Positions 6,740-62,697 of a DNA stretch of 64,000 nt are shown piece by piece (within the stretch, counting starts at the first letter, position 1; every line of letters starts with the position of its first letter). The position numbers and the translations under genes are program-made. The notes beneath the pieces are model-generated. The model saw only the letters and a program-made list of their open reading frames with translations, was not told where the DNA came from and did not search any database. Source of the DNA: Chara braunii (lineage: Eukaryota; Plantae; Charophyceae). The stretch spans positions 12,422,114 to 12,486,113 of the forward strand of contig BFEA01000001.1 of NCBI GenBank assembly GCA_003427395.1, given 5' to 3'.

Positions 6740-7197
6740 AAAGGATAGAAACGAGTTTGTGGGGCAGTTGAGTGACCCAAATCCTGTCGTGCAGTACTCG
6801 TGATCCCACCATCAGAATTTTACATGTGGTACCCAGAAAAGCAAGGAGATCTTTGTTCCCCTCCTCTCCTTAACACTGGGCATGCCCGTGCAAAGAAAGC
6901 TTCCCGCCTGAATCTTTTCAATCGGTTGGGGGTGTGGCCAACCTCAAAAGAGGGTGGGGTCATCCAGAGGCCCAGTGGATAGAAGATTTTCAGTATTTTA
7001 CTTGCTGTTGTGCAATTATCTCATTGGGCGGAGCCCCCCTTCAATCATGGAGTATATGGGGGGTGTCAGAAGTCGAGTTCATTCCAGAAAAACGTGGCAG
7101 TTACTTTGTTCACTGTCGATGCAACCACCACCATCAGATCATTTGTGATCTGATGGCTGGGAAGCACCCAGCGGTGGGAGGTCTGTGTTTCTTATTT
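6740..7197. repeat. Dispersed non-coding repeat (MITE-like), also present at 43.7-44.5 kb
   Basis: 6740-7070 matches the reverse complement of ~44140-44467; 7105-7195 matches ~43757-43850 directly. Confidence 0.8.
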
Positions 7198-30918: not shown

Positions 30919-33527
30919 TGTTATGGGATATGCGTTGTGATCTGAATTTGGTCAACTACACTCCAAAGGATCGTTAAGGGTCCAGAGAAAGGCTTTCGTT
31001 CCCCTAATTTCGTACCGGAAGCGAAAGATAGGGTTAGGAGGAGGGATACGAAAAGCATGGACACCCTGGTTGTGACCTGTACTTTGCACGAGACGAAAAC
31101 AGAGGGCTGGAAAAACAGAGTGTTGAGAGAAACTGAGAAAAGCGAGAAGTTTTTGAGGAAGTTTGCTATGGAGAAAACAGAAAGTCATCACAAACTTATT
31201 GAGTACGTTTTCTATATCTGCGGGTCAAGTGGGAAGCCGCATAGTACTGTTTCATCATTGGAAAGCCTGGAGCAGACCAAGGCAAGAGCCTAAGAGGAAA
31301 TAAGAGTGCTTTGATCTCTGTCTCAGAGGACCCCTCCCGTAAATCCGGTCTGTAAGCAATATACAACGTTTGATACTCCTCACTGTTAACAGAGGGTGGT
31401 GCTGAGTACTGTTTATCAATGCGCAGGACTCGGCACTGCTAACTGTGTTTCTGTGCATAATGCGGCTGTCAGTATGCAGAGTTCAGTAATAATGGCAACA
31501 ATCAACCAACGAATCAATTAATTCCCAATCAGTATTCGGCTCATGATCAGGCAGTACTCTATCGGTACCATAATAGTACCCCAGATGCCTGAACGTTAGT
31601 CAGCAAAACTGCGGTTGCCCCTAATCATTGAGGGATCATAGCGTGAAGATTCATTACTCTGGCAGATCTCAGACAATATCAAATCAACGTTTATTTCATC
31701 ATTCAACTATTCAGAAAATCAGGAGCTAGTCAGTTTACCATGATCAAACAGTCAATCGGTTCCTTTATCAGTTTTTCGGATTAGCGCACGGATCGGCGCT
31801 CTGACCAGCATTTTGATCAGTATTCAGTTTTCTCAATCAGGTAATTAATCAATTGTCCTCAATCAACAATCACTCAGCCGGTAATCATTCGATCAGCTAT
31901 TCGGACCTGCAATCTGGAACTACAGTCAGTAACATCAACAGGAAACAACAACCAGGGGGTAGTTTCGCTTTTAGAAGCAGCAATCGAAAAGCAACCAGAT
32001 ATCAACAACTAGCAACCTGCAACCAGGGATCATCAATTAGAGCAGCACTTCAGAATGGTAATCAGAACAACAACTCTCATCAAGTAATCAGTTCTCTAAT
32101 CTGCAATCAACCAATATTTTTTCAGCAAACAGTTTTCAACAATCAGTTTTCAGCAATCAGTTTTCAGCAATCAGTTCAGGAATCAGTTCTCAGTGATCAT
32201 CCAGTCGGTTTTGCGCTGGTAGGGCCACTCATGAGCACAGTTAAGTCTACGCTGGTCAGTGAGTCAGTGCTGGCCAGTCTCAATCGGATTTCGTGCAAGG
32301 AGGCATTCCGCTATCAGTATGTTAAAGCCATTGTTTTCAGACAGGGAGATCTGTCGATCTTCGTTGTCCATACCAACTTTGCTGACGGTACTATCCATGA
32401 CTTGAGGCCATACCTGAAGAAGGGCAAGGAGGCTCATGAGCATTTCGATCCAGTCTGGATCACAACCGCCAAGTACCTCGAGCAGAGAGAGAGGGAGCTC
32501 GATGAGGGTGGCATTACGCTGATCCGCAGTTTTGGCCGAAAGCTTTATACTGACTATCTCTGGCCTCCTGTTCCTTCCCTCCTCATAGATGGCACGAGTT
32601 GGCTTGACATGGTTAGCTTGGAGAAAAGGTATATCTCTCCAGCAGTAATCGACATTGAGGCACTGACTGAGCCTACCGAGTATCCCTACCTCAGACGAGG
32701 GGTCTTTTCAGTGGACGGACTGCCTACACTGTGGGAGGAGTTCTGCTCTATGGTTAACTTTCGTGTCATGTACCTTGGATGGTCATGTTCAGAGNNNNNN
32801 NNNNNNNNNNNNNNNNNNNNNNNNNNNNNNNNNNNNNNNNNNNNNNNNNNNNNNNNNNNNNNNNNNNNNNNNNNNNNNNNNNNNNNNNNNNNNNNNCTAT
32901 GGTTAACTTTCGTGTCATGTACCTTGGATGGTCATGTTCAGAGCTTGCTGGCTTCAGGTGGCTCTTTGTCATGAGGCAACAACCTCAGATTGTATGTGGG
33001 CGTGGGCCACAGCACCAGAGATGGACCACAAAATGAGAGATTGAGAGAGACCGATCAGGGGGATGAGTGAGGATTCTTGAGAGGTGCTGACCATGCTCGC
33101 ATATATGTACTTCCTGAGATTATCATGAGTTTTCATTCTTCCCTCATTCATTTGAATCTGTCATTACTCGAGTCAGTCAGTCTTGCTTCTTGCATTAATC
33201 CTGCCTGATGATTGCTATCGTGGATAATTATGTCACAGTTCTCAAAATCAGATTGACATGAGTGATACATGCACAACCCCCTATCATAATTTTATAATTG
33301 TTATTTGCATAATTCTCTGCTGTTCCGAATCCAAATAAAAGATTCCCAAGACCGGGGACCGGCGAAGATCGTAATTGAAGGGTCTCGCTCGAAGCCGGAC
33401 CACACAACAGGAATGGATTTGCATTATTTATTTTATTTTATTTATTGCAGACACACACAAAAATCCTGCGTGACAGCCTGTTGGCTTTCACGTCGCCCAA
33501 AGAGGCTCGACTGGAAAAAGTGTGACA
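30919..33527 (+). mobile_element. 3' LTR (~2.5 kb) of a third LTR element, apparently inserted into the 5' LTR of element 2
   Basis: PPT AAAAGGGGG (30910-30918), then TGTTA... and ...GTGTGACA ending at 33527, exactly where similarity to the 3' LTR of element 2 begins. Partner LTR not visible. Confidence 0.65.
32231..33036 (+). CDS. Hypothetical protein (~220 aa after closing the false gap) encoded within the LTR
   Basis: ATG at 32231 (MSTVKSTLV...). Globular-looking composition. The gap flanks overlap by 47 bp and merging them keeps the frame open to TGA 33036. Confidence 0.5.
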
Positions 33528-35452
33528 GCGAGCGCCTAAGCTCCAACTTCTTCGCGCGCCTCGCACCCCCGTTTTTTGCTCTGCATCCCTGCGCCATCTT
33601 CCTTTCTTGCTACGGGCGTTTTCCCCCATGCACGACCCTTCGTCTTCCCCTACGCCCATCTCGATCCCCACCCCATCTTCCTCTGCGAGTGAATGGTTGT
33701 GTAGTTGGGATGCGCGGATCAATGTGGAAGGCGAAAAGGCGCACCACTTGAACGAACACCCCAATTACGCCTGACCACGCGACTCCGCGGAACACCCCTT
33801 CCGAAACCCTTCACCCTTCTCTGTCCTGCTCATCTACAACCGGCGCTGCCCGCACCTCGCGCTGACAACCCGCCGCCTCCCACGTTATAAGTTGTCGCAA
33901 CCCCCTCCTCTCCCTCTCTTTGATCTCGGCTTCAATGCTGCGCGAGCTATGCGCGAACGTCCGCGACGCCGAACAGGATTGACGAACCCAAGTTACGGGT
34001 GGAGTGACGACGTGGGTCGGGCTTAGCGATAGACTCGGGGTAAGCCAGCCGAAGGGATTGAGTTGTGGTGGAGATCGGGCGCCGATCACGACAGGGTCTT
34101 GTGGCTATGGTGGTCGGTGGTCCTTGGGAAGTTTGCGGTTGCGCCTGAGGGCGTCAGCCAATTGGAAAATTTTATGTACAAGGAACCTCGCTTTCTTTTT
34201 TCCATTGCTGCTTTGTCTCCGTGAGATGTATGCAACGTCCCGTCGAGTGGGTAATCGGTTGTATGCATAGGAGTGAGTTGCAGTGAGATGGTCTGTGAAG
34301 GGGTGTGAGTCTGCGTATGCATGTATGTGGTCCTTGGGTATTGCGTGGCGATTGTCTGCCTGGATGCATGATTAACTCGGCCATCGTACCTCTTTTTCCT
34401 TTTGCCTCGTTCCCTTGTTGGTTTCATTGCTCGATCGCGTAGGGCGGGGGCCTTCGTGTACCGAAGGGATCCCTTCCGTCCTGCGCGCTCGAGTCGGAGT
34501 CCCGCGGCACTGACGTCTGACGTGGCACATCACTGTTGAGGATCGGAGGCGTTCACTGTGCCTACTAAAGGTGGTCAGCAAACGGCTCCGCCCCTCCTTC
34601 GGACCCCTCTGGTTGAATGGTGCCACACCAGAGAGAGAGAGACGTTGTCGCTCTTTGTATGGAGACGGGTTTCCCATCGAGCACGGGTTCTCGCTTGTGC
34701 ACTTACCCCGACTCCGCGCGTTGCAATGCACTCCCGATCTTCCCTATCGTCGACGACGACAGCGTCTACTGCGACGCGGACGTACAGAGTGCCCTACGAC
34801 GCACGGAGCAGGTTCACTGGCGTAACCCTGAATGGGCGTGCCACATCGAGGGGGAAGGGTTTGTGCTGATAGACCGCTTTTCTTCCCCGCCCCTTATACT
34901 GCCTTACACCGACCTGACGGTGCTCCCCTGGTCTGCGGCTTGCGCTGCGTGGCGCCCCTTGTTTGGTTGCCGATGGTGCCAGCAGGGGGACTCCTGCTCG
35001 TGGCGAAGGCTGGTTCTGGGGTACGAAGGAGACGCTCGGTTCCCTGAACTCTCCCAGGACGCCGGAGCTCTCCCTGCCCGTTTCCGTGTCCCGACAGCGG
35101 CGACAACCCCCGCCCGCCGAGTTCCCCCGGCCATGAGTCCCCGAGGCCTCGACGAACCCAACGACGAGGCTGGAGAATCCGCGGGGGGGAATCCATCGCC
35201 CTTTACGCGGAGCAGGCCCGTTGAGGAATAGGTTCCCCGCCTGTCCGTTCTCCCCGTTCTCCTCCCCCTTTGTTTTTTTTTGGTAATCCTGACCAAGGAT
35301 CGAGCCCAAGTCGGGGGAAACCTATCGGCCCCGAAACGAGAGACTCCCATTCCTACCGGGAGACTCAACCCCCATGGCCAAAAATCCTCGGCCACGCCCC
35401 CTTCTACTCTGATCGGTGACCCAGTACGGAAAGCCGCGACGGGGCACGAGGT
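33528..35452 (+). repeat. 5' LTR of element 2 (left end lost)
   Basis: Collinear with 47724-49689. TATA-like CACGTTATAA at 33881-33890. Ends ...GGGGCACGAGGT with no CA. Confidence 0.92.
34617..35231 (+). CDS. LTR-encoded hypothetical protein; second copy at 48817-49374
   Basis: Open in both LTRs. Core PIFP..YC..ALR..GFVLI..LILPY..LTVLPW is shared with the ORF at 61100-61666. Start codon uncertain. Confidence 0.65.
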   Translation: MVPHQRERDVVALCMETGFPSSTGSRLCTYPDSARCNALPIFPIVDDDSVYCDADVQSALRRTEQVHWRNPEWACHIEGEGFVLIDRFSSPPLILPYTDLTVLPWSAACAAWRPLFGCRWCQQGDSCSWRRLVLGYEGDARFPELSQDAGALPARFRVPTAATTPARRVPPAMSPRGLDEPNDEAGESAGGNPSPFTRSRPVEE

Positions 35453-35464
35453 TGGTATCAGAGC
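35453..35464 (+). promoter_or_regulatory. Primer-binding site complementary to initiator tRNA-Met
   Basis: TGGTATCAGAGC directly after the 5' LTR. Confidence 0.93.
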
Positions 35465-35651: not shown

Positions 35652-38600
35652 ATGGTGGAACCCGAAATTGGGGGTGGAAACGGCGGCGATAACCACGCGG
35701 TGATGGCCAATCATCCCGTGTATTTTGTACCTCCTCCCTCCGAGGTTCCCATCTTCTCCGAGGATGATACCGACCCTCGCACCTGGCTAGCCGCCTTGAA
35801 AGCCCAGGGCTGGTCGGACGAGTTGCTCCGAGAACGAATCCCGAGGAGGTTAGCCGGAACCGCTTTTGAGTGGTATGGGCAGAACCCCTACACTAATTGG
35901 CTACCCTTCCAACGAAAGTTTCTCGACCGTTTTGATCACATCGTACCTGGGCAGTGCCTTCATCTGATAAAAGAATATACGCAGCAGCCTCGGGAAACCT
36001 TGGCCAAATATGCTGAGCGTTTTACTTATTTAGTTGAACGTTCCGGGGTCGATGAAAAAATGGTGCGGACTGATTTCGTTAGGGGACTGTCCGATTCTCG
36101 CTTGTGGAAGAAGATCCGCAAGAAATGCAACCCGATAGAAGACTGAGCTCATTCAGTATGCCATTAAGTACGGGAAGGAAAATTACGATGTAGGTCTGGA
36201 TTCGGAGTCCGACGAAGACAACCCTTCGGGTGTCGGACGCCATAGCTTCTCCGCTATAGCGTGAATGTTTGAGGATCGCTTCGGGTTAGGACCGGCAAAG
36301 AAGAATTAGGATCAAAAAATTTTGTCTTCCGCATCGACCTCCCGACGCTCTGGTCAAGCTCAAGGAGGTCGGGACGAGGACGAAATATCAATGAAAGAGG
36401 TCGCGGCCCAGCTGGTCACGGTGGTGGCCCCGCTGACGAAATTCGTTCAAAACTTGCAGCGGTAACGGGTGGCAGCTGCGCAGCGACAGCAAACGGCCAT
36501 GGTCGCCGGTACCCCTATGACCTGACCAGCTGCACCAGGCGTCGCCCAGCCTCTGCGATGCTACAACTGCAATCAGCCGGGCCACCTTGCGAAGGACTGT
36601 CCGAAACCTCGAACTCAGACTGGGTCCGCGGGGCCCACCGGACCTTCCCAAATCCCGTTAGCTGCTCCAACCGCTGCAGGACAAGGGAGGGTAGCCACAG
36701 TGATGGATACTGGAACAACGGAAATGGTGACCCCTGCGGCCACCGAGATAGGACCCAATGAGTATATGGCTGCGACGATGTTCGAACCCGGGACCATTGG
36801 AGTGATACGCCACGTCCAAAGGATTACCGAGGAAAGCGACCTCGGGCCTTGTCGGCCGGGGTTCCAAGATCTCACAGCCCCTGGCCCTGAGTACAAAGAC
36901 GGGCACATCGACGTGTTGGATGCATTGAAGGCTCTGGATCTACGGATCCCCGTCCCTATTCCCTATCTGCAAACCATTTCCGAAGCTGCTAACGAAAAGT
37001 TTATCGAACGATGCCTCAAGAACAGGCGCCGATTCGAGGAAAGTCGAAAGGGCAAAAAGTCGGTCCTACGAGACCTACCCACAAACGAAGAGTCACAGCC
37101 CTCGACCTCAAAGGTGCACGAAGCAAACCGGGTAGGAATGATCCAGACCGTAGATCCTGCCTCGGAGAAACCTGAGGTATTCCTTTGAGTGTGACTGCGA
37201 GGTCTAGGGAAACCCCTCGGCCGCCATCCTAGACCCGGGATCGTCAGCGGTCGCCATTTCTTGGAGATTGACGAAACGATTGGGAAGGGAAGGACAAGTT
37301 CAGCCCCTCCGACCGGATGAACTGTATATATCCGCTACGGAGGACAACATTCATTGTAAGGGGCGGATAACGAACGTGCCTATACGAGTGGGGCGGGTGC
37401 ATTGCTTGTGCGACGCAATCGCACTGGATGTACAGGCGTATGATGTTCTGCTAGGCATTCCGTGGCAGGCGGCGGTCGGAGCGCGAATGCACTTTGACAG
37501 CTGTAAGGTGGTGCTCACATCGGCCCACCCCAAACCACAAACGATACCGATGAGATTGGCGGTGCGTATGTGCACCCAGCCTGCGCCTCGAATCACTACG
37601 AAAGCCCATCAAATCAACATGATCCAACGCCTGTCACCAGGCGAAAATAAAACTTCATCGGAAACTGACGAGACTGATGTACCCGACCGATATCCGGTCC
37701 GGGTTCAGGATCGGTGGCACCATTCCTGGCGACGAGAACCCATTGAAATAGTTCGGGGCGAGTCCGATTGGTCGCACGCGTTCTCCTTCGTGGTGCAGGG
37801 AGAACCCCTGTTGAGGGTGTCCCGAATAACTGACCTTTCGGAACCCCCTGCGTCCTTATACTTTAGGACGGACCCCCTACCTGAAAGGTTTGCGGAGCTT
37901 AGGGGGTTATGCGATTTGACTTTTCGGCCTCCTAGGCCCCTACTTACGAACGCAAAAGCCGCCCTGCTCTTGAAGGAAGGGGTGTCGTTTCAACCCCGAA
38001 CGAGGGAATATCGATGGAGGCCGAAGGAGCTGTTACAGGTCTTTTCAGTGGAACCCTCGGCTGAAACCGAGCTCGAGAACGACAGTGACATGGAAAACGA
38101 ACCGATAAGCCCAGCAGACAATCAACTCATCGCGACCGTGCTTTCGGCAAAAACCGACAATTCGTTGTTTGGTGCCTCACCCGAAGCCAACGCGGCAGTC
38201 CCCACGGTTACGTCGACGATCTCCCTCCCTGAGGGAAACGTGGACGTCCGACTGCCGGCCCATGTGCCTGACGACTACAAGCGCCTTCTTTTGGCGGTCA
38301 TATGGGCCTACCCAGAGGCCGTCAGCATCCAGGACCACGATATAGGACTCACCCACCTGATCCAACACGCGATTGATACCGGTGATCGCGCTTCGATACA
38401 TTGCCGACCGTACCGCTATTCCCTAAAAGAAAGACAGCTGGCCTTGGAAAGGGTACGGGAGTTCGAGCGGTTGGGGTGGGTTGAACGATCGCTTGGACCA
38501 TGGTCATTTCCCGTGGTCCTCGTGCCAAAACGAAACGGTTTAGTCCGAGTGTGTATTGACTACCGCAAATTAAACGCTATCACCACCAAAGATGTTTATC

Positions 38601-41527
38601 CGCTGCCGCGGATTGACGATCTACTGGATGCTATCGGGTCCGCTCGGGTCTTTTCGAAGTTCGATATCCGACACGGGTTCCACCACGTCGCAGTCCGACT
38701 GGAAGAGGCCCAAAACCGCTTTTGCCCTGTTCGAGGGCACGTGGCAGTGGATCCGATGTCCCATGGGAATTTGCAATGCCCCTGCAACATTTCAGCGGGC
38801 CATGAATATGGCCTTCGCCGAGTTCGTTAACAAAACCCGTTTGACATAGCCGTTGATAAATTTGTGAGTGATTTTGTACATGGATGACATTTTGGTCTTT
38901 TCCAAAACCTACGAATACCATGTGGAACATATCGAATGGGTGTTACATGCATTGAAAGATGCGGGGTTCAAAGTGGCTCTGGAGAAATGTGAGTTTTTTT
39001 TGTCCGAGATTTCCTTTTGGGGCTACATCGTCACGGTCGAGGGACTAAAACCTGATCCCCGGAAGGTAGCAGCGGTCCGAGAAGCCCCAGCCCCAGTCAC
39101 GCTCACTCAGGTTCGAGCTTTCCTAGGGCTGGCCTTCTTATTATCGATGCTTCATTCGGGGCTTTGCCTGCCTCGCCAAGCCGCTGACGAACCTGCTGAA
39201 GAAGGAGGAGCAGCTGATATGGACGCCAGAATGCGAGGCGGCTTTTCAGGCACTTAAGGAGGCTCTGACATCGGCGCCCGTGTTGGCGCGTCCCGATCCG
39301 ACGAGACAGTTTGCGCTGCATACCGACTGGCAACCGCACGCGATATCGGCGGTACTGACTCAGCAAGGAACGGATGGAAGGGAGCACGCCATCGAGTATG
39401 CGTCGAAAACGCTAAGCCAGGCGCAGTCAAACTACGAGGCATGCAAGGGTGAGTGCTTGGCGGTGGTGTGGGGGGTTCAGCACTTTCGACCGTATCTGTA
39501 CGGCCAGAAGTTCGTGCTCGTGACGGATCATCAGCCATTGCTGTCGTTGCGGAACAACACACGGGTACCTTGGACCGCGCCACCGGGCAGCACGGAAACG
39601 CCGACGGTCTGACGCGCCTCCAGCCGCCGAACAAGAGTCCCGCGAACGAAAGGTTGATCCCGTGGAAGCCGATTTCGCCTTCCACGGAGCCCGGCTACGG
39701 GGAGGAGAATGTCCTCCGCAGGGGTGTTGCAGCAATCGGAGATGGCGATCTCCCTTGAGGAAGCCGCCACCCCTTCTTCCCTTCCCTATTCTTTAACCCC
39801 CTCTCCTGACCCTGACTCCCCTCCGAGCACACCTTCCCAAATCTGCTTCTTCTGCACCTTGCCCATGATACCGGACGGGGGAGATCCTCCCCTCGAGGGG
39901 CCTAACTTTCTTCCCTGGGTACAATGTAGTCAATGTCACATCGCCCGGTCCCATAGGAGTTGTGCCCGGTATCGGAATGAGAAAAGTTGGAACTGTCCCA
40001 ACTGTCGGACGGACCACGTACCTACGGAAAAACTATATTTAGTAGCCAGAATGGCACACAGAGTTTTGCCAAGTGTCCGTCGAGCGGAAGTCTGGACAGA
40101 TCTTTTGCTATTACGGAGACTGATAGGCGACCCGCTGACGGAACTTACCAAGGCTGAACGGTGACGTGTCACGGAACGGGTGCACGATTACCGCTGGCAG
40201 GGATCCGTCCTTCAAAAACGAAAAGACGATGACGTCAACGGATCTAGTTGGCTGACGGTTCCACACCCATAGGCCAGGTTCGATTGGACACGAGCCGCCC
40301 ACGAGGAGGATGCGGTCCACTTTGCAGTCAAATACACGGAAAAAGCAATAGAGAAAAACGGATGGTACTGGTCGGGAATCCGGGAGGATGTGAAAGACAT
40401 CGTCTGGACTTGCCCGGCCTGTGCGGCCGATAAGGCGCTGATACAGATGCCCCGTACAATAGTGTATACCCGGGTAGAGCGCCCCTTCCAACTGGTCAGT
40501 ATCGATACGACGGACATCAATGTGCCGAGAGGCCCTGTTGATCAAGGAGAACTCAATGTTCTTCTTGTAGCCGTAGACCATTTTTCGAAATGGATCGAAG
40601 CGTATCCAATGACCCGCCGGAACTCGCAGGAAGTAGCCTGGTATATTAATCGCTTTTTGTGCATGCACCTGAACGTGGAAGAGATACATATGGACAGAGA
40701 TACATATGGACAATGGATCTGAGTTCCAGGGGGAAGTAGAGCGACATCTTGTAAGGGCAGACGTTAAAATTTCGTACTCCCCAGGGTACTGGCCCCAAGC
40801 CAATGGGCTCGTGGAGAACGCCAACTGAATGATCAAGACTGCACTTAGACGGAATATCACGGCAGGTGATACCAGGCCGTGGCCTGTCATAGTCGACCAC
40901 ATTTTGGCCGTCTATCGGGCTACTCCCCACAGGAGCACCGGGATGTCCCCGTTCCAACTGAGAACCAATAGCGTCCCCAGAGTGCAGTTGTCACCTCTAG
41001 TGGGTACGGAAGTTGGAGTAACCCGGGCCCAACACAAGGACAAGGTCCAGCATTACTTGGATCTGATGGCCTAGACCTATCCCGCGTTAGCCTGAAGACG
41101 ACAAAGGGCCGTAGATCTGACGCATCAACGGCAGATCCGGGACTATGAGAACCGACACCCCACAGCGGGACCAATGCCCCGTTATAAAATCGGGGACTTG
41201 GTGCAGGTACGGAAATCTGCGCGCTCCTCCAAGATCCACCCACGCTATACCGGCATTTACGAGGTGACGGAAGTTGGCGCACGAGGACAGCACTCCGTGA
41301 AGCTGGTCCCCCGGCATAGAACGCAGGCCAGGTTGCTTACGCGACACGAGGCGGCTCTTCGACTGTTTCAGCCATCTCCGGGCTGCGAATCGGCTCTTGC
41401 CCCGTCCGAGCCTTCGTTCTCTCTCTCCCCCTCTCCTTCTTCGTCTTCTTCCTCTTCCCGATCTGCCTCGTCCCTTGGTACTGAGAGTCTCAGGGAGCAG
41501 GATGAACCATCGCCAGCCGGAGCATGA
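35652..41527 (+). pseudogene. Gypsy gag-pol of element 2 (Gag-PR-RT-RNaseH-PHD-integrase), decayed
   Basis: Gag (LAGTAFEWY..FLDRF), CYNCNQPGHLAKDC (36559-36600), ILDPGS protease site, RT (VCIDYRKLN, PMGICNAPATFQ, LYMDD), RNase H (HTDW, GECLA, TDHQPL), integrase (H..H..CPAC, VSID, VDHFSKW, PQANGLVE), PRYTGIYEV. Confidence 0.95.
39844..40005 (+). other. PHD finger (C4HC3) inside Pol
   Basis: CFFC...WVQCSQCHIARSHRSC...WNCPNC. Confidence 0.85.
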
Positions 41528-43676: not shown

Positions 43677-44987
43677 ATCAAAACCATAAACAACATATTT
43701 TTTGGCCTGCATGGCTTAGGTAATCTTGCTGGGTAGACTCCCTGATTTTCCCTGCTTCGTTCACTGTTGTTGTAACCACCACCATCAGATCATTTGTGAT
43801 CTGATGGCTGGGAAGCACTCTGCCGTGATTTCCAGTGGGAGGTCTCTGTTTTTTTTGTTTTTTTTTTTTGCCTTTCTCCTGTTTTCTCAGTCCAGGAACT
43901 CGTAATGAACCTGTCAGGCCGCTGCCACTCAGTGTCACACTGGATCGGCCACACTCCAATCCGTCTGCTAATGGGACCATGCCCCTGGGGTGTGGTCCCA
44001 TTAGCAGTCCGATAGAAGTGTGGCCGATCCTGTGTGACACTGAGTGGCAGCCGCCAGACAGGTTTATTACGAATTTCTGGGCTGAGAAAACAGGAGAAAG
44101 GCCACAAAAAAAAAAAAAAGAAACTGACAGCAGTGATTCTGACACCCTCCATATACTCCGTGATTGAAGGAGGGCTCCACCCAATGAGATAATTGGACAA
44201 CAGCAAGTAAAATGCTGAAAATCTTCTATCCAGTGGGCTAAGGCCGACCCCAACCTCGTTTGGGGTTGGCCACACCCCCAACCGATTGAAAAGATTATGG
44301 TGGGAAGTTGTCTTTGCACGGGCATGCCCAGTGTTAAGGAGAGGAGGGGAACGAAGATTTCCTTACTTTTTCGAGTAATACATGTAAAACACTGCCCGTG
44401 GGATCACGAGTACTGCACTGCAGGATTTGGGTCACTCAACTGCCACACAAACTCTTTTTTATCCTATCCGGTTGCTAGTGGGACCATGCCCCTGGTGCTT
44501 GTCTTTTTTTTTTTTTTCCGTTGCAACGGGAAAGAACTTTTTTTTTTTTTTTTAAACAACGGGCCCAGTGCCCAAGGCTGATATTATCAATGAAAGTGTT
44601 GAGGCTGGGGACCTCACAGTCTATCCAGAGTGAACCCGAAAAACAGTTGAGAACCGGGCTCACACTGCTGTCTGGTCGAAATTGCCCTCAATACTGGTAG
44701 GGTGATGGTCCTGAGTGCTGGTCACACTGCGGTAGGATAGTAGGGACAGGGGGTGTGCTGGGAGTATTAATGTGGGGATGGGTAGGGTAGGTGGCCTATC
44801 CCTGGGGTCTGGTCCCACCTACGGCCGTTGGGTTGAGAAACCTCAACGGTGTGACACCATTTACCGCATTTTTTAAATCCGAAAAATGCATTTCAGATTT
44901 ATTCGTAGCAGTTTTTATTCATTTGAAGAAAATGATGCGAAAATAGTGGTTTCTGTCGAGGATTCTGCGTATCTTGAAGTACCATAT

Positions 44988-45109
44988 GGGCCTCGCTGCA
45001 CTACTCTCGAAATGTGCAAAACGAGAGTGAATCTTTCCCTAGAATATGGAAAGATGCACTGCCATAATTTTTGTCTTTTGTGCATGTCGAGAGTAGTGCA
45101 GCGAGGCCC
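44988..45109. mobile_element. Small Harbinger-like MITE
   Basis: Inverted termini GGGCCTCGCTGCACTACTCTCGA. Related ends at ~6016 and ~49855. Confidence 0.75.
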
Positions 45110-46765
45110 CATGATGTGGAAACACGAGGACGTCGAAGTGGGTCCAAAGAGCAATGAATATAGGCAAGAACAGGGAAACATACATCGACTTTCTTTTTTC
45201 TTTTGTTTGTGCATGTGGTGAGCAACGGAGCGAGGCCTTATAGAGCCCACGCACGACAGTTACGGCTTTCATTGCACTGACGAAGTGCCTGACACAGTAT
45301 ACGAGAAACGGGGAACAGCAGACGGCGACAAATCCCAAAAATCACAAAATTTCTCATCGACCATGTTGAGAAACCTACCCTTGACCGTGGAGGGTAGTTT
45401 TCTCAACTCCGTGGCGCTTGCCCATGCCGCCTTCCCTCCATTGCGGGAGTCCATTCGAAGTCCTTATAAGAAAAAAAAAAATCATTCAAATCACCCCGTA
45501 GGACATCAACCTTTCGAAATACTTCCAACCGTGGGATCGCAGCCCTGTCGACGGCCACATCCTGTCGAACGTTGTCGCTCGTCGTAGAAAACTCGGCGTT
45601 GAGTTTTCTCAACAACACAGGTGGGACCAGACCCCTGTTGCTACCAGCAATCACCACAGTCTGGTCCTTGGCCTCTACAACACCCTGGGCTTTCAAAAAA
45701 AAAAAAAAAAAAAAGAATGGATCTTCTGCTAGAACGTGGAATAATACACCGCCATATGATTGTCTTTTGTGCATGTGGNNNNNNNNNNNNNNNNNNNNNN
45801 NNNNNNNNNNNNNNNNNNNNNNNNNNNNNNNNNNNNNNNNNNNNNNNNNNNNNNNNNNNNNNNNNNNNNNNNNNNNNNNNNNNNNNNNNNNNNNNNNNNN
45901 NNNNNNNNNNNNNNNNNNNNNNNNNNNNNNNNNNNNNNNNNNNNNNNNNNNNNNNNNNNNNNNNNNNNNNNNNNNNNNNNNNNNNNNNNNNNNNNNNNNN
46001 NNNNNNNNNNNNNNNNNNNNNNNNNNNNNNNNNNNNNNNNNNNNNNNNNNNNNNNNNNNNNNNNNNNNNNNNNNNNNNNNNNNNNNNNNNNNNNNNNNNN
46101 NNNNNNNNNNNNNNNNNNNNNNNNNNNNNNNNNNNNNNNNNNNNNNNNNNNNNNNNNNNNNNNNNNNNNNNNNNNNNNNNNNNNNNNNNNNNNNNNNNNN
46201 NNNNNNNNNNNNNNNNNNNNNNNNNNNNNNNNNNNNNNNNNNNNNNNNNNNNNNNNNNNNNNNNNNNNNNNNNNNNNNNNNNNNNNNNNNNNNNNNNNNN
46301 NNNNNNNNNNNNNNNNNNNNNNNNNNNNNNNNNNNNNNNNNNNNNNNNNNNNNNNNNNNNNNNNNNNNNNNNNNNNNNAAGGAAATGCACCCACATGCAC
46401 ACACATGTGCTCCCAGTCTTGGGGTATGTGGTGACCCTTACTTTTTTTCCCTCTTGCTGTTTGAATTTCGGGAGGGAGGGGCATGTTTGGCCACCCCACC
46501 CTGTTAGCAGGGGTCAAAATTTTTTTTTCTTTTTCTTGTTTTTAGTGTTTGGGCGCGTAGGGCCACGTGTCCGAGGCCCAACGCGCCGGTTCCGTTTTTC
46601 AAAATTCGACGGAACACCCCCGTTTTCGCGTTAAACGCGATTTAATGGGGGGGCCCAGGCCCGTTGAACGGGTTCAACGACGTTGAATTTCGCCCGTTCT
46701 CCGTTCATAGGGCACACAGCCCCGGAGTGCCCCGATCATTGACATTAGCAGTTCCTCCGAGCCGG

Positions 46766-47239: not shown

Positions 47240-47723
47240 TCACCCTTGTCTACTTCTCCCTTCGTCTCTCTTTCTCTTTCTCTTCATCGTCTTCTCCTCC
47301 TATGCCCAAAGTTCGCGCGTCGAGACGCGCTGTACAAAAAAAATAAATAAATAAATAAATAAAAAATTCAGTGGACAACTTACCGATCGGGCCAGCTGAC
47401 GATGAAGGGGCCGCCCAAGCATCCAAAATATGATGACATCAGTAGTCGGGAGACTGCTAATTTTTCGGAACCCCCTGCGCATCACAGATGTGATAAGCTC
47501 AGACCCGTACCACGCGGCTTGCCGTATCCCTGAGGAAAAATCCCCCGGAAGCCCAAAGTACGGATGTGAATGAAAAGGGTTTTTTTTTTTTCCTTTTTAC
47601 TTTTGTTTTCTTTTTGAAACGGCTTTTTCACTTTTCTTTGGTTAATAACTTCCGCGCGGGCGAATAGCGGCCGCGGTGTGAAGACCAAGAAACGGTTTCG
47701 GTTGGGACTTTTTGAATTTTTGT

Positions 47724-49700
47724 GCGCGCGCCCCCAAGCTCCGACTTCTTCGTGCGCCTCGCACCCCCGTTTCTTGCTCTGCATCCCCGCGCCATCTTCC
47801 TTTCTTGCTACGCGCGTTTTCCCCCATGCAGGACCCTTCGTCTTCCCCTACGCCCAGCTCGATCCCTACCCCATCTTCCTCCACGAGTGAATGGCTGCGT
47901 AGTTGGGATGCGCGAATCAATGTGGAAGGCGAAAAGGCGCACCACTTGAACGAACACCCCAATTACGCCTGACCACGCGACTCAGCGGAACACCCCATCC
48001 GAAACCCTTCACCCTTCTTTTGTCCTGCTCGTCTACAACCGGCGCTGCCCGCACCTCGCGCTGACAACCTGCCGCCTCCCACGTTATCAATTGTCGCAAC
48101 CCCCTCCTCTCCCTCTCTTTGATCTCGGCTGCAATGCTGCACGAGCTATGCGTGAACGTCCGCGATGCCAAACAGGCTTGACGAGCCCAAGTTACGGGCG
48201 GAGTGACGACGTGGGTCGGGCTTAGCGATAGACTCGGGGTAAGCCAGCCAGAGGGATTGAGCAGTGGTGGAGATCGGGCGCCGATCACAATAGGGTCTTT
48301 TGGCTATGGTGGTCGGTGGTCCTTGGGAAGTTTGCGGTTGCGCCTGAGGGCTTCAGCCAATTGGAAAAATTTTGTGTAAAAGGAAACTCGCTTTCTTTTC
48401 TCCATTGCTGCTTTGTCTCCGTGAGATGTATGCAACGTCCCGTCGAGTGGGTAATCGGTTGTATGCATGGAAGTGAGTTGCGGTGAGATGGTCTGTGAAG
48501 GGGTGTGAGTCTGCGTATGCATGTATGTGGTCCTTGGGTATTGCGTGGCGATTGTCTGCCTGGATGCATGATTAAGTCGGCCATCGTACCTCTTTTTCCT
48601 TTTGCCTCGTTCCCTTGTTGGTTCCGTTGCTCGGTCGTGTAGGGCGGGGGCCTTTGTGTACCGAAGGGATCCCTTCCGACCTGCGCGCTCGAGTCGGAGT
48701 CCCGCGGCGCTGACGTTTGACGTGGTGCATCACTGTTGAGGACCGGAGGCGTTCGCTGTGCCTGCTGAAGGTGGTCAGCAAACGGTTCCGCCCCTCCTTC
48801 GGACCCCTCTGGTTGAGTGGTGCCACACCAGAGAGAGAGAGACGTTGCCGCTCTTTGTATGGAGACGGGTTTCCCATCGAGCAGGGGTTCTCGCCCGCGC
48901 ACTTACCCCGACTCCGCGCGTCGCAGTGCAGTCCCGATCTTCCCTATCGTCGACGACGATAGCGTCCACTGCGACGTGGACGTACGGAGTGCCCTACGAC
49001 GCACGGAGCAGGTTCACTGGCGTAACCCTGAACGGGCGTGCCACATCGCGAGGGAAGGGTTTCTGCTGATAGACAACTTTTCTTCCCCGCCCCTTATACT
49101 GCCTTACACCGACCTGACGGTGCTCCCCTGGTCTGCGGCTTGCGCCGCGTGGCGCCCCCAATTTGGTTGCCGATGGTGCCAGCAGGGGGACTCCTGCTCG
49201 TGGCGAAGGCTGGTTCTGGGGTACGAAGGAGCCGCCCAGTTCCCTGAACTCTCCCGGGACGCCGGATCTCTCCCTGCCCGTTTCCGTGTCCCGACAGCAG
49301 CGACAGCCCCCGCCCGCCGAGTTCCCCCGGCCGTGAGTCCCCGAGGCCTCGACGAACCCAACGACGAGGCTTGAGACTCCACGCGGGGGAATCCATCGCC
49401 CTTTATGTGGAGCAGGCCCGACGAGGAATAGGTTCCCCGTCCCTCCTTTTTCCCCATCTAGAGGAACCGAGTTGGGCCCGTCCGTTCACCCCGTTCTCCT
49501 CCCCCTTTGTTTTTTTTTGGTAATCCTGAGCAAGGATCGAGCCCCAGTCGGGGGAAACCTATCGGCCCCGAAACGAGAGACTCCCATTCCTACCGGGAGA
49601 CTCAACCCCCATGGCCAAAAATCCTCGGCCACGCCCCCTTCTACTCTGATCGGCGACCCAGTACGGAAAGCCACGACGGGGCGTGAGGTTGCGCATCACA
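47724..49700 (+). repeat. 3' LTR of element 2; true left end somewhere in 47489-47724
   Basis: Collinear with the 5' LTR up to ...GAGGT (49689), then TGCGCATCACA. Candidate TG starts at 47489, 47565 and 47677; no clear PPT abuts any of them. Confidence 0.9.
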
Positions 49701-50508
49701 ACAGGCGGAGGTCCTGAAACCCGGCCCTCCTCACCTGAGACTCGGATGATGTAATCGCCCGTAAGTGTAGGGTCTTCCTTACGGCCTGTGGAATGAAAAA
49801 AAAAACAAGTCGGGTAAATTAATCACCCTGGTCCAGTTAGGGCGCCGTTACAATGGGCCTCGCTGCACTACTCTCGAAATGTGCAAAATGAGGGTGAATC
49901 TTCCTCTAGAATAGGGAAATGTAAGGATCCGTAAGTGGGGTGTGGAAAGAGGCCATTGGCATGGGCACGGTTCCACTAGCACACACGAGTCACGGCCTAT
50001 TCCAACCTGTGCGACGCTTTGAGAAAAGGAAGAAAAGTATTTTAAAGACCGTAAAAAAAACAAACATGCCCATGTCACATTTCCCAAGATGGCAAGATGG
50101 GAACGAGGGCCGCGTTCGAAAGTGCTGCTTACCATGCCGCCAATGCTGAATGAGGACAGAGTGGTTGGTGACGATTGCAGTCTCATGTACCACCCGGAGG
50201 GAGTCCCTTAGTGTGCCCTACTGGACTCCCTTCTCTGACGATTGCCATGCACAAGCGTGCACTGCGTACATGTTGAGAAAAAAAATCCAATACTCGATGG
50301 GGCTGGAATAGACTGGGAAAAAAAAGGTGCTGGTGGTGAATACCAACCCCTTGGACTACTTGATTTGTTTTTCCCGCGTGGCTTGGACTCTCTTTCACAC
50401 CTGCTCTCGTCCTTCTTCAGATTCTCTTCTTTACTGCGCCGTTCTTGATTGCCTCCGTCCTTGGTATTGCTGCTGTCTTCCGTTGCTTTGTTGCTTATGT
50501 CGATGCAG

Positions 50509-60919: not shown

Positions 60920-62697
60920 TGTGACGCCCAACCTCACGCCCGGCGCAACTTCCTGATCGGAGTGGGATGGGGGCCTGGAAGTGCGAAGAGGGGTGTGCCA
61001 AGGATTTTTGGAAAAGTGGGGGTTAAAGTCCCAGGTCGGAACTGGAATCTTCTGTGGCCGAGTTCAGGGGCAGAGATGCAATAGAGCACTGGGAAAATTT
61101 CACGGGCGCGGGCTTGCACGCTGGTTGTGCGGGGCCGTCCGATCTTGACGTGATCGCCAGTTCTGGGGAGCCTGTCGAGGCGGTCCTTGGGGCCCACGCC
61201 TTCGGGGTCCGCCACGTGGCGTGGGTTGGTGGGAACTATGCCTAGATGCCGAGGCTTCGGGGGTTCGGGTATGGGCACGTCGGCTGCAGCTTCTGCGCGG
61301 GGTGGAGGGCCAATAAGGCGATATGGAATTCCACGGTACTACTGTAAGCTGATGATAGGGGAGGAGGAGGTGGTATGGCGGGAAATTAGTGGTGATAAGG
61401 ACGAAGCCGGGGGTTATGAAATATTGCGTGTTGTACGTGTTTGGGTACTCGGGTATCCGTGGGTCGCTTCGCACGGCAAGATGGAATTCCCTAGCGCAGA
61501 ATCTATCGTTTCCCGTGAGGCAGGGGAACACCGGGTTTCTCAAATTTCCCCGTAATCGGAGTTGCTCTTCTTCCCAGATTTCCCGGTACCCGAAATACGA
61601 CTCGTAATCCTCGGAATTCCAAGATACGTCGGAACTCCGCGAGCTCGTCATTCTTTCATCACTCACACCTTGGGGGATAAGTTAATCAGGGAGATCACCG
61701 CTCGTAAGTGCGTAAGAGAGATGCGAACAAGTCGCACTTACGCGCGATAGGTAACCCGATCCCGGTTGACGTCGACTCCTACTTCAGTGATGGGCTGACT
61801 ACGGGTGTTAGCCAGGACGCGATTGGCGAGTCCGAGTGGTATGGACACATGTAAGCCGCGCTCCATTCGGATCGCACTTGCAGGTGCCCATATGGCACGT
61901 CGGATGGTGCGCTCCAGACTACCCGTAAGATTCGACAAGCCAACACACTCTACTTATCACGCCAACATGCAATCCCCATTCTCATTCATTATGCACGAGG
62001 GTTCGAAGGGAAACGATCAAAAACGAAAATGCGAAGGTGCGCGAACCATCCACATCGATACAAAAAAAAAGAATCAAATCGAACAACAGGACGAGTATAT
62101 GGCCGCAAAAACAAGGGCGAGTTACCCGTAATCGACACCAAAATTTATATACATAGATAAAAAAGGACCGAAAAGAAAAGCGCAAATCCATGTCCATTTT
62201 CGACTTCAACTCTCTCTCCTCTCTCTCTCTCNCCGATGCCGACAGTCCGTCGTCACGCATCAAAACATGAAGCCGTCACCCCGCTTAGTCCTCCTGCGCC
62301 CGTCAGGTTCGCTCCGCGCCCACAGTCCGTCGTGGCCCGCGTCAACCCCGCGCACTCGGCACCAGCTCGTCGGGTCGCCCGACTCCCACTTCACTCACCT
62401 CTTACTTCGCTCGTGTGCCGACCCTCTCGATCGCGTAACCCCGAGCTTCCAGCAACTGTTAAGAGAGAAGGTTAATCGCGCAACCGGAATTTATAGCGTG
62501 CATGCATGCGCGAAGAACATGGAATTACAAGGACGTAGATAGATGCGGGAAAGGGAGTGCTTACGTTTGCACGGTCGGGCCGCGGCGTGGGGGACGTACC
62601 CAACTCCACGCATCGATCCGAACATGCAAACGCGGCTACCCAGCAAGGGAGGGGAGAGAGGAAGAAACGAGGCGGGAAGAATAAGAAGCAAGAAACA
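60920..62697 (-). mobile_element. LTR of a diverged relative of element 2 (other end in the gap)
   Basis: Minus-strand end GGGCGTGAGGTTGGGCGTCACA versus GGGCGTGAGGTTGCGCATCACA in element 2; CACGCTATAAA TATA box near 62490; homologous ORF in the same position. Confidence 0.8.
61100..61666 (-). CDS. LTR-encoded hypothetical protein (188 aa), homologous to 34617-35231
   Basis: PVFP..FC..AVR..GFVLI..LLLPY..LTVVPW core; intact ATG-to-stop ORF. Confidence 0.7.
   Translation of the reverse strand: MSDERMTSSRSSDVSWNSEDYESYFGYREIWEEEQLRLRGNLRNPVFPCLTGNDRFCAREFHLAVRSDPRIPEYPNTYNTQYFITPGFVLITTNFPPYHLLLPYHQLTVVPWNSISPYWPSTPRRSCSRRAHTRTPEASASRHSSHQPTPRGGPRRRGPQGPPRQAPQNWRSRQDRTAPHNQRASPRP

What the first reader, a model, noticed from the sequence alone, without database searches (positions are those of the whole stretch)
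47476..49700. Gypsy element whose integrase attachment end is not in the 5' LTR but is encoded internally (A...B-A-B split-repeat layout)
Seen: the 5' LTR ends ...GGGGCACGAGGT (35452) and abuts the PBS TGGTATCAGAGC with no CA. The 3' LTR matches it to ...GAGGT (49689), then adds TGCGCATCACA (49690-49700). The same 11-mer occurs at 47476-47486 as TGCGCATCACA-GA-TGTGAT, which resembles an end-to-end CA/TG junction. A diverged relative at 60920 also ends GAGGT-TGGGCGTCACA, the same length and register. Established: in canonical LTR reverse transcription the right end of the cDNA is copied from the bases just upstream of the PBS, so both LTRs must end identically; split direct repeats are typical of tyrosine-recombinase elements, yet this element has a DDE integrase. 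Inference, two models: (1) the linear cDNA starts at 47476, is circularised, and integrase opens the offset CA-GA-TG site; (2) RT first copies the 11-nt internal template and this oligo jumps to the PBS position (TGCGCATCACA resembles TG-GTATCAGA), like hepadnaviral primer translocation. Either would be a non-canonical Gypsy replication route. Only one full element is visible here, and I cannot confirm novelty without a literature search.
Basis: partly seen in the sequence, partly recalled or inferred. Interest (0 to 1): 0.9.

Follow-up and report, generated by a model that had tools for sequence, protein, structure and literature searches.

The report
Gypsy retrotransposon with permuted integration ends
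A group of Ty3/gypsy retrotransposons in the alga Chara braunii lacks the right-hand integrase end in its 5' LTR and encodes it once as an 11-base block just before the 3' LTR, so each new copy must gain that end by a step missing from the textbook LTR replication scheme.

Summary
The genome is Chara braunii.

In the window plus 12 related loci (about 320 kb):
- Every LTR that precedes a tRNA-iMet primer-binding site (PBS) ends ...GAGGT and abuts TGGTATC, with no CA end (12 of 12).
- Every LTR that faces flanking DNA carries GAGGT, then 0 or 1 T, then an 11-mer ending CACA (14 of 14).
- In 10 elements the same 11-mer sits 2 nt before the 3' LTR. There it forms a palindrome, for example CGTCACA-TA-TGTGACG.
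- Four perfect 4-bp target-site duplications lie outside TGTGAC...11-mer. The terminal 11-mer is therefore element DNA.
- Internal and terminal 11-mers share family-specific bases.
- The elements encode gag, protease, RT, RNase H and an rve (DDE) integrase. No tyrosine recombinase was found.

Canonical reverse transcription cannot put the 11-mer on the right end. It must be re-derived each cycle from the internal copy. My preferred route is a bridging of the two cDNA ends, followed by integrase processing. This is inference; no extrachromosomal junction was seen.

I found no published description. The scan has noted the same architecture on other pieces of this genome (s1-565563, s1-576342, s1-559047, s1-557972).

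The parts
33517..33520 (.). Left copy of the 4-bp target-site duplication (AAAG)
   Evidence: It matches ACAG at 49701-49704 in 3 of 4 positions. Perfect 4-bp duplications lie at the same positions in L001, L004, L009 and L012.
33521..35452 (+). 5' LTR. It starts TGTGAC and ends GAGGT, with no CA end and no 11-mer. It lacks about 230 nt found near the start of the 3' LTR.
   Evidence: Self-BLAST aligns 33521-35255 to 47721-49455 (93.7%) and 35239-35460 to 49476-49698 (95.5%). Sequence read.
35453..35464 (+). Primer-binding site TGGTATCAGAGC (initiator tRNA-Met type), directly abutting the LTR
   Evidence: The same direct abutment occurs in 11 other elements.
35652..36146 (+). gag fragment
   Evidence: Pfam Retrotrans_gag, E 2.1e-08.
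37268..39257 (+). Protease and reverse transcriptase fragments (two ORFs, broken)
   Evidence: Pfam RVP_2 and RVT_1. Best homologues are Chara braunii RT proteins.
37836..37852 (+). Second copy, inside pol, of the motif that precedes the internal 11-mer (TTTCGGAACCCCCTGCG)
   Evidence: It is the best internal match to the pre-11-mer context. It lies at the same distance from the PBS (2.4-2.6 kb) in 6 of 7 elements. Its function is not known.
40390..41305 (+). Broken DDE integrase (rve) region
   Evidence: Pfam rve, E 3.7e-07, on ORF 40390-40722. tblastn with the L004 integrase ORF covers 40501-41305 at 48-51% identity.
47441..47458 (+). Conserved hairpin (7-bp stem, GGGA/AGGA loop) upstream of the internal 11-mer
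   Evidence: RNAalifold on 7 elements. Three pairs show compensatory changes and 92% of cells are paired.
47461..47475 (+). Conserved block TTTTTCGGAACCCCC that ends exactly where the repeated 11-mer begins. It stands where a polypurine tract would be expected.
   Evidence: Alignments A1 and A2. GGAACC and the following C-run are nearly invariant across 10 elements.
47476..47486 (+). Internal 11-mer (B1), TGCGCATCACA
   Evidence: The equivalent block is present in L001, L004, L005 and L007-L012.
47487..47488 (+). 2-nt spacer (GA here, TA in all relatives) at the centre of the palindrome ATCACA-GA-TGTGAT
47489..49689 (+). 3' LTR core, from TGTGAT to GAGGT
   Evidence: A DNA-run contig joins 49700 to 47489 with 8 other bases between them. 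Other copies therefore use these same boundaries (table 5c).
49690..49700 (+). Terminal 11-mer (B2), TGCGCATCACA. It is the CA end of the integrated element.
   Evidence: It lies inside the target-site duplication.
49701..49704 (.). Right copy of the target-site duplication (ACAG)
60920..62666 (-). LTR of a related family (the L001 type). It ends GAGGT-TGGGCGTCACA at 60920 and is cut by an N run on its other side.
   Evidence: It aligns to the L001 3' LTR at 90-92% identity.

Best explanation
This is a decayed copy of an abundant Chara braunii Ty3/gypsy lineage in which the ends made by reverse transcriptase and the ends used by integrase are offset.

Shown by sequence comparison: the right-hand integrase end (...CGTCACA-3') is not encoded upstream of the PBS. 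It is encoded once, in the 11-mer B1 that sits 2 nt before the 3' LTR. Together with the LTR start, B1 forms a built-in end-to-end junction, CACA-NA-TGTGA.

Inferred route:
1. Minus-strand DNA is primed by tRNA at the PBS. The right end of the cDNA therefore stops at GAGGT, sometimes with one extra T left by primer removal.
2. The left end of the cDNA carries a 13-nt extension, B plus NA. Either plus-strand synthesis starts at the conserved GGAACCCCC|TG boundary, or the minus strand copies an RNA primer that covers B-NA.
3. The right end is extended on that left-end extension by a third template switch. This resembles hepadnaviral circularisation and gives a relaxed-circle or cohesive-end molecule with the junction GAGGT(T)-B-NA-TGTGAC.
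4. The DDE integrase cuts after CA on both strands and inserts the DNA with a 4-bp duplication.

The product is LTR-PBS-...-B1-NA-LTR-B2, as observed.
For: - Asymmetry: 12 of 12 PBS-adjacent LTR ends lack the 11-mer. 14 of 14 flank-adjacent LTR ends carry it.
- The internal block B1-NA-TGTGA is found in 10 elements, always after GGAACCCCC.
- Perfect 4-bp duplications lie outside TGTGAC...B2 in L001 (ACCA), L004 (CTAC), L009 (CCAC) and L012 (AACA). The window and L008 match in 3 of 4 positions.
- Position 3 of the 11-mer is G in both B1 and B2 of one family. It is C in both in another family and in the window element. This position lies outside the inverted repeat with the LTR start.
- B1 and B2 differ at 6 of 99 positions, like LTR divergence of 3-7%.
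- The joint GAGGT/B varies by one T, which equals the first PBS base, in L005, L007 and L009. That fits a joint made anew at each insertion.
- An rve integrase lies downstream of RT-RNase H.
- There is no purine tract next to the 3' LTR.
- Tf1 cDNA is reported to carry single-stranded copies of both primers at its 3' ends (PMC11042837).
- Retroviral integrases are reported to cut palindromic LTR-LTR junctions (PMC1180852 and PMC1905944).
Against: - No extrachromosomal junction was observed. The only 49700-to-47489 joint in the DNA runs has 8 unrelated bases between the two sides, which indicates two adjacent insertions.
- All sampled copies are old (LTR identity 93-97%), so activity cannot be checked.
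- The proposed plus-strand primer or boundary, GGAACCCCC, is not purine-rich. No such primer is known to me.
- Two of eight elements with both flanks readable have no recognisable target-site duplication (L005, L011).
- The sample is about 320 kb of a draft assembly with many gaps.
Confidence: 0.45

Rival explanations
1. Closed-circle route. Blunt linear cDNA with B-NA at its left end is ligated by host end-joining into a two-LTR circle. Integrase then opens the circle at the palindrome next to the joint.
For: It gives the same end product and the same covariation. The 0 or 1 extra T at the joint looks like the end heterogeneity of retroviral two-LTR circle junctions. Foamy virus and HIV-1 integrases are reported to cut such palindromes (PMC1180852, PMC1905944, PMC4372172).
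Against: A two-LTR circle would hold two identical palindromes, B-NA-LTR at the joint and B1-NA-3' LTR. Cutting the second would give LTR-B-NA-LTR-PBS-internal-B. No such copy and no GAGGT-B-NA-TGTGA junction occurs among 10 elements and about 25 LTR ends. It also makes replication depend on host ligation.
Confidence: 0.2
2. Primer translocation. Minus-strand synthesis first copies the 11 nt of B1. The short DNA then moves to the position just upstream of the PBS, using TG or TGG homology. The linear cDNA is thus born with the 11-mer at its right end.
For: B starts with TGG or TG, like the PBS. It explains the covariation. Hepadnaviruses do this with a 3-4 nt primer (my own knowledge).
Against: Nothing known could prime at the 3' side of B1. 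The tRNA 3' end does not pair there, and the strictly conserved iMet PBS abutting the LTR (12 of 12) would lose its role. An exact homology-guided transfer does not predict the extra T seen in three copies.
Confidence: 0.1
3. Ordinary canonical element. The missing 11-mer is a private deletion, an assembly error, or a defect of dead copies, while unsampled master copies have symmetric LTRs.
For: The window copy alone would allow it. The copy is old, there is TG microhomology at the putative deletion, and the assembly is a gapped draft.
Against: 12 of 12 independent 5' junctions from at least three subfamilies on different scaffolds show the same direct abutment. 14 of 14 outer ends have the 11-mer. 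The internal copy is conserved and covaries.
Confidence: 0.03
4. The terminal 11-mer is target DNA. The element ends at GAGGT and inserts site-specifically next to a genomic TGNGCGTCACA motif.
For: The bases after GAGGT are similar in all copies.
Against: The 4-bp target-site duplications lie outside the 11-mer in four perfect and two near-perfect cases. The 11-mer varies with the element family, not with the locus. An end at GAGGT would have no CA and no inverted repeat with TGTGAC.
Confidence: 0.02

Closest known systems
Canonical Ty3/gypsy (Metaviridae) LTR retrotransposons such as Ty3, Tf1 and gypsy
   Same: Gene order is gag (CCHC), protease, RT, RNase H, rve integrase. LTRs are long. The initiator-tRNA PBS abuts the 5' LTR. 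The integrated element is bounded by TG...CA with short inverted repeats and a 4-bp target duplication.
   Different: The 5' LTR has no CA end, so U5 does not encode the right attachment site. The 3' LTR is 11 nt longer. No polypurine tract abuts the 3' LTR; a palindromic end-to-end junction stands there instead.
DIRS-1, Ngaro and PAT tyrosine-recombinase retrotransposons with split direct repeats or an internal circle-junction sequence (Capello et al. 1985, cited in PMC5006619; PMC7192593; PMC6681497)
   Same: The layout is A1...B1-A2-B2. An internal sequence reproduces the junction of the two element ends, so terminal information is regenerated from an internal template.
   Different: Those elements encode a tyrosine recombinase, make no target-site duplication and lack a DDE integrase. 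Here rve is present, no recombinase was found in any ORF scanned, 4-bp duplications are present, and B is only 11 nt.
Integrase cleavage of the palindromic junction of retroviral two-LTR circles (foamy virus PMC1180852; HIV-1 PMC1905944, PMC4372172)
   Same: A CA-(spacer)-TG palindrome made of abutted LTR ends is a substrate for a DDE integrase. Two staggered cuts yield processed ends.
   Different: In retroviruses this is a side route and both ends are already encoded canonically. Here the right end exists only after the ends are joined, so the route would be obligatory.
Hepadnaviral (and caulimoviral) circularisation by template switching at the ends of minus-strand DNA (reviewed in PMC5454437; otherwise my own knowledge)
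   Same: The plus strand reaches the 5' end of the minus strand and continues on its 3' end, using a very short terminal redundancy.
   Different: Those viruses have no LTRs and no integrase, and the circle is the end product. In the Chara elements this step is only inferred.
Tf1 cDNA with single-stranded copies of the PBS and PPT primers at its 3' ends (PMC11042837)
   Same: A Ty3/gypsy element whose cDNA ends carry reverse-transcribed primer sequence as 3' tails. My preferred model needs this kind of left-end tail.
   Different: In Tf1 the tails are trimmed or drive integrase-independent insertion. They do not supply an attachment site.

Membership tests
Ty3/gypsy LTR retrotransposon | pol order RT - RNase H - integrase (rve), with gag and an aspartic protease upstream | tested here: met
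   L004 has gag/zf-CCHC, RVP_2, RVT_1 and RT_RNaseH, then rve downstream. L005 has rve. The window has Retrotrans_gag, RVP_2 and RVT_1 and a broken rve.
Ty3/gypsy LTR retrotransposon | Direct long terminal repeats, and a tRNA PBS immediately after the 5' LTR | tested here: met
   LTR pairs are 93-97% identical. TGGTATC(A/G)GAGC abuts the LTR in 12 elements.
Ty3/gypsy LTR retrotransposon | Integrated element bounded by TG...CA and flanked by a short target-site duplication | tested here: met
   The boundaries are TGTGAC...TCACA. Duplications are ACCA, CTAC, CCAC and AACA, plus two with 3 of 4 matches.
Ty3/gypsy LTR retrotransposon | Both LTRs end alike, with the U5 end (CA) copied from the bases just upstream of the PBS | tested here: not met
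   The 5' LTR ends GAGGT in 12 of 12 cases. The outer LTR end carries 11 (or 12) further bases in 14 of 14 cases.
Ty3/gypsy LTR retrotransposon | Polypurine tract immediately upstream of the 3' LTR | tested here: not met
   The 25 nt before TGTGAC read TTTGGAACCCCC + 11-mer + TA in all 10 elements, with no purine run.
DIRS/Ngaro-type tyrosine-recombinase retrotransposon | Encodes a tyrosine recombinase and no DDE integrase | tested here: not met
   Pfam scans of the long ORFs of L004, L005 and the window found rve and no recombinase domain. Short or broken ORFs were not all scanned.
DIRS/Ngaro-type tyrosine-recombinase retrotransposon | Split direct repeats or an internal circle-junction sequence (A1...B1A2B2) | tested here: met
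   The layout is LTR...B1-NA-LTR-B2, with B1 equal to B2 within the range of LTR divergence.
DIRS/Ngaro-type tyrosine-recombinase retrotransposon | Insertion without a target-site duplication | tested here: not met
   4-bp duplications are present.

The most novel reading that the evidence does not exclude
A whole lineage of DDE-integrase LTR retrotransposons must join its two cDNA ends before integration, as a relaxed or closed circle, because the right attachment site exists only in that junction. Its template is an internal circle-junction sequence. That would combine canonical LTR replication with the logic of DIRS-type elements and pararetroviruses.
Probability: 0.6. Interest if true: 0.85.

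Novelty: new variant of a known kind. Interest (0 to 1): 0.8.

Why it matters
The textbook scheme of LTR reverse transcription predicts that both LTRs end alike, and that linear cDNA is the integration substrate. Here a large natural family breaks the first rule systematically. It still uses a tRNA PBS and a DDE integrase and still makes target-site duplications.

If the inferred end-joining step is real, three things follow:
- Circle-type junctions would be an obligatory integrase substrate. In retroviruses they are mostly treated as dead ends.
- There would be an evolutionary bridge between integrase elements and the split-repeat logic of tyrosine-recombinase retroelements.
- LTR annotation tools would mis-call this family, because they require a PPT and matching LTR ends.

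The idea is directly testable by sequencing extrachromosomal DNA ends in Chara.

Tried and rejected
- Private deletion or assembly error: rejected after fetching 12 related loci.
- Terminal 11-mer as target DNA: rejected by the position of the target-site duplications.
- The 11-mer as complement of a tRNA 3' end (TGTGACGCCCA ends in CCA): rejected. The window and the L004-type family have TGC..., so the complement ends GCA.
- The 11-mer as a diverged PBS copy (BLAST aligns TTGGTATCA with TTGCGCATCA): rejected. Relatives share only TGG.
- RNA ending beyond B2 and passing B2 on directly: I found no step of reverse transcription that could copy it.
- Read laying: no GA-type junction and no usable RNA start or end. 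The loose-end table did not list 49689 or 49700. RNA coverage was low, mostly 90-95% alike, and on the sense strand if the library is of the usual stranded kind.
- Metagenome scan for the internal motif: no match.
- Rfam and tRNA scans of the region: nothing.
- My memory that Dictyostelium DGLT-A has asymmetric LTR modules could not be confirmed in the papers read, so it is not used.
- Five literature searches found no description of this architecture. The Chara genome paper is not in the searchable library.
Full report
**What is at the coordinates.** The window comes from Chara braunii. The best protein matches of the element's RT fragment are CBR_g proteins of assembly GCA_003427395.1.

The 5' LTR ends GGGGCACGAGGT at 35452. 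The initiator-tRNA type PBS TGGTATCAGAGC follows at 35453 with nothing between. The 3' LTR matches up to GAGGT at 49689 and continues with TGCGCATCACA to 49700. The same 11 bases stand at 47476-47486, followed by GA and TGTGAT. On the minus strand at 60920 another LTR ends GAGGT-TGGGCGTCACA. The exact 11-mer has only these two occurrences in the window.

Self-comparison gives the LTR pair as 33521-35460 against 47721-49698, at 94-95% identity. The 5' LTR starts TGTGAC at 33521 and lacks about 230 nt that the 3' LTR has after its own start at 47489.

The copy is old and broken. It has gag, protease and RT fragments, a broken rve region, an N gap at 45779-46378, and fragments of other repeats inside it.

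**Is it private to this copy?** No. I fetched 12 loci around related Chara RT genes and scanned them for LTR ends. With the window this is about 320 kb.

- Every LTR end that precedes a PBS reads GA(G/A)GT|TGGTATC. This holds for 12 of 12: the window, L001-L005, L007, L008 twice, L009, L011 and L012.
- Every LTR end that faces flanking DNA reads GAGGT, then 0 or 1 T, then an 11-mer ending in CACA or a decayed form of it. This holds for 14 of 14.
- No LTR runs from GAGGT straight into flank.
- No PBS is preceded by the 11-mer.

**The internal copy.** In 10 elements the 3' LTR is preceded by the same arrangement. This is a conserved block TTTGGAACCCCC, the 11-mer, two bases (TA; GA in the window), then the LTR start TGTGA(C/T). 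The 11-mer's last seven bases and the LTR's first seven form a perfect palindrome in most copies, CGTCACA-TA-TGTGACG. This is what two abutted LTR ends would look like. There is no purine tract where a PPT should be.

**The terminal 11-mer is element DNA.** Four-base direct repeats flank TGTGAC...11-mer:

| Element | Left / right flank |
|---|---|
| L001 | ACCA / ACCA |
| L004 | CTAC / CTAC |
| L009 | CCAC / CCAC |
| L012 | AACA / AACA |
| window | AAAG / ACAG |
| L008 | AGTC / AGCC |
| L005, L011 | none recognisable |

Four perfect 4-bp matches among eight elements cannot be chance. A contig in a DNA run joins position 49700 to 47489 with eight unrelated bases between them. Other copies therefore end and begin at exactly these bases.

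**Concerted change.** The 11-mer differs between subfamilies:

- TGGGCGTCACA in the L001/L005/L007/L009 type and in the window's 60920 LTR.
- TGCGCGTCACA in the L004/L008/L010-L012 type.
- TGCGCATCACA in the window element.

Within each type the internal and terminal copies agree at position 3. That position lies outside the inverted repeat with the LTR start. Differences between B1 and B2 of the same element amount to 6 substitutions in 99 positions, plus one 2-nt deletion. Several are CpG transitions. This is in line with LTR divergence of 3-7%.

**What kind of element.** The relatives encode gag with a zinc knuckle, an aspartic protease, RT and RNase H. An rve integrase lies downstream of RT. 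No tyrosine recombinase domain was found in the ORFs scanned. The lineage is Ty3/gypsy by gene content and order. It fails two textbook features: matching LTR ends, and a PPT abutting the 3' LTR.

**Why the canonical scheme fails.** This rests on established knowledge of LTR reverse transcription. The right end of the cDNA is fixed by the first base copied from the tRNA primer, which is the base 5' of the PBS. Genomic 5' LTRs, which template the RNA, read GAGGT|PBS. The cDNA's right end should therefore be GAGGT. The 11-mer at the outer end cannot come from the parent's 5' LTR, and I found no step that could copy it from the RNA's 3' end. Its only template is B1 or cDNA copies of B1. B1 lies two bases before U3, and B2 lies directly after U5. 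The simplest topology is that the U5 end becomes contiguous with B-NA-U3, meaning the two cDNA ends are bridged.

**Preferred route (inference).**
1. The left end of the cDNA carries B-NA. Either plus-strand synthesis starts at the sharp, conserved boundary GGAACCCCC|TG, or the minus strand copies an RNA primer that covers B-NA. Tf1 cDNA is reported to carry such reverse-transcribed primer tails (PMC11042837).
2. The plus strand reaches the end of the minus strand at GAGGT, sometimes with one extra T from a retained primer nucleotide. It then continues on that left-end tail, as hepadnaviral plus strands do at circularisation.
3. The result is a junction GAGGT(T)-B-NA-TGTGAC.
4. Integrase cuts after CA on each strand. 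It removes NA from the right end and NA plus the complement of B from the left end, then inserts with a 4-bp stagger.

This accounts for five observations: the layout, the target-site duplications, the covariation, the sharp left boundary of the repeat, and the variable T at the joint in L005, L007 and L009.

**Closed circle or bridged ends?** A ligated two-LTR circle would contain two identical palindromes. Cutting the other one would give LTR-B-NA-LTR-PBS-internal-B. Among 10 elements and all LTR ends seen, no such form and no GAGGT-B-NA-TGTGA junction occurs. With random choice this outcome has a probability of about 1 in 1000. I therefore prefer a nicked or cohesive-end junction, in which only the true ends are processed. 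The closed-circle version is not excluded. Foamy virus and HIV-1 integrases are reported to cut such palindromes (PMC1180852 and PMC1905944).

**What is not shown.** No extrachromosomal junction, no cDNA end and no transcript end was observed. The read-laying run gave only contigs of 2018 DNA runs and thin RNA coverage. All copies sampled are old. The assembly is a gapped draft. The mechanism is therefore an inference from anatomy.

**Known or new.** Internal circle-junction sequences and split direct repeats are known from DIRS-1 and Ngaro-type elements. These use a tyrosine recombinase and make no target duplication (Capello et al. 1985 as cited in PMC5006619; PMC7192593; PMC6681497). Five full-text searches found no description of a DDE-integrase LTR element with this layout. 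The library does not hold every journal.

Within this scan the same architecture has been reported on other pieces of the genome:
- A follow-up report reaches the same reading (s1-565563).
- Two first-reader notes describe it (s1-576342, s1-559047).
- One follow-up mentions an unexplained end asymmetry (s1-557972).

I reached my reading from my own loci before seeing these notes.

**Verdict.** The structural interpretation is supported. The mechanism is plausible but untested. I rate it a new variant of a known kind, of high interest to people who work on reverse transcription and integration.

Noticed in passing
window 37836-37852; L001 10625, L003 10702, L005 10439, L007 9749, L008 10305, L009 10439: The motif before the internal 11-mer, (T)TTGGAACCCCCT, recurs 2.4-2.6 kb after the PBS, between protease and RT. 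In some elements the match extends into TGGGCG or TGCG. In the L003 gene frame it encodes L-E-P-P. In position it resembles a central/3' PPT pair. It may mark a second plus-strand start, or it may only reflect coding constraint.
   Followed up: partly
window 47441-47458 and the aligned positions in L001, L004, L005, L007-L009: A conserved hairpin (7-bp stem, AGGA/GGGA loop) lies about 17 nt upstream of the internal 11-mer. Three of its base pairs show compensatory changes. It may position the cleavage at GGAACCCCC|TG.
   Followed up: partly
L011 16590-16635: The palindrome unit is tandemly duplicated: 11-mer-TA-TGTGACG-CCC-11-mer-TA-TGTGACG. This looks like a strand-switch or slippage product at the palindrome.
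   Followed up: no
window 49853-49919 and 44986-45052: A short repeat (93% identical between the two sites) has enormous depth in the DNA runs, about 2x10^5 summed word depth. It also has the highest RNA coverage of the stretch. One copy lies inside the element and one in its 3' flank. Rfam has no match.
   Followed up: partly
window 43755-44465 versus 6742-7167: The element's 12-kb internal region contains fragments of another repeat that is also present at 6.7-7.2 kb of the window, one of them inverted at 88% identity. Part of the unusual length is therefore nested insertion.
   Followed up: no
window 47387-47650 and 49562-49735: Summed contig depth is 10 to 100 times higher over the first ~170 nt of the LTR plus the ~90 nt before it, and over the last ~130 nt of the LTR, than over the LTR middle. 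The termini, including the internal junction, are shared by far more copies than this family's LTR body.
   Followed up: no
L008 4900-4973 versus 19087-19125: An LTR end with its 11-mer and about 36 nt of flank is present twice in inverted orientation, one copy about 140 nt before the 5' LTR. This is either an inverted segmental duplication or an assembly artefact.
   Followed up: no
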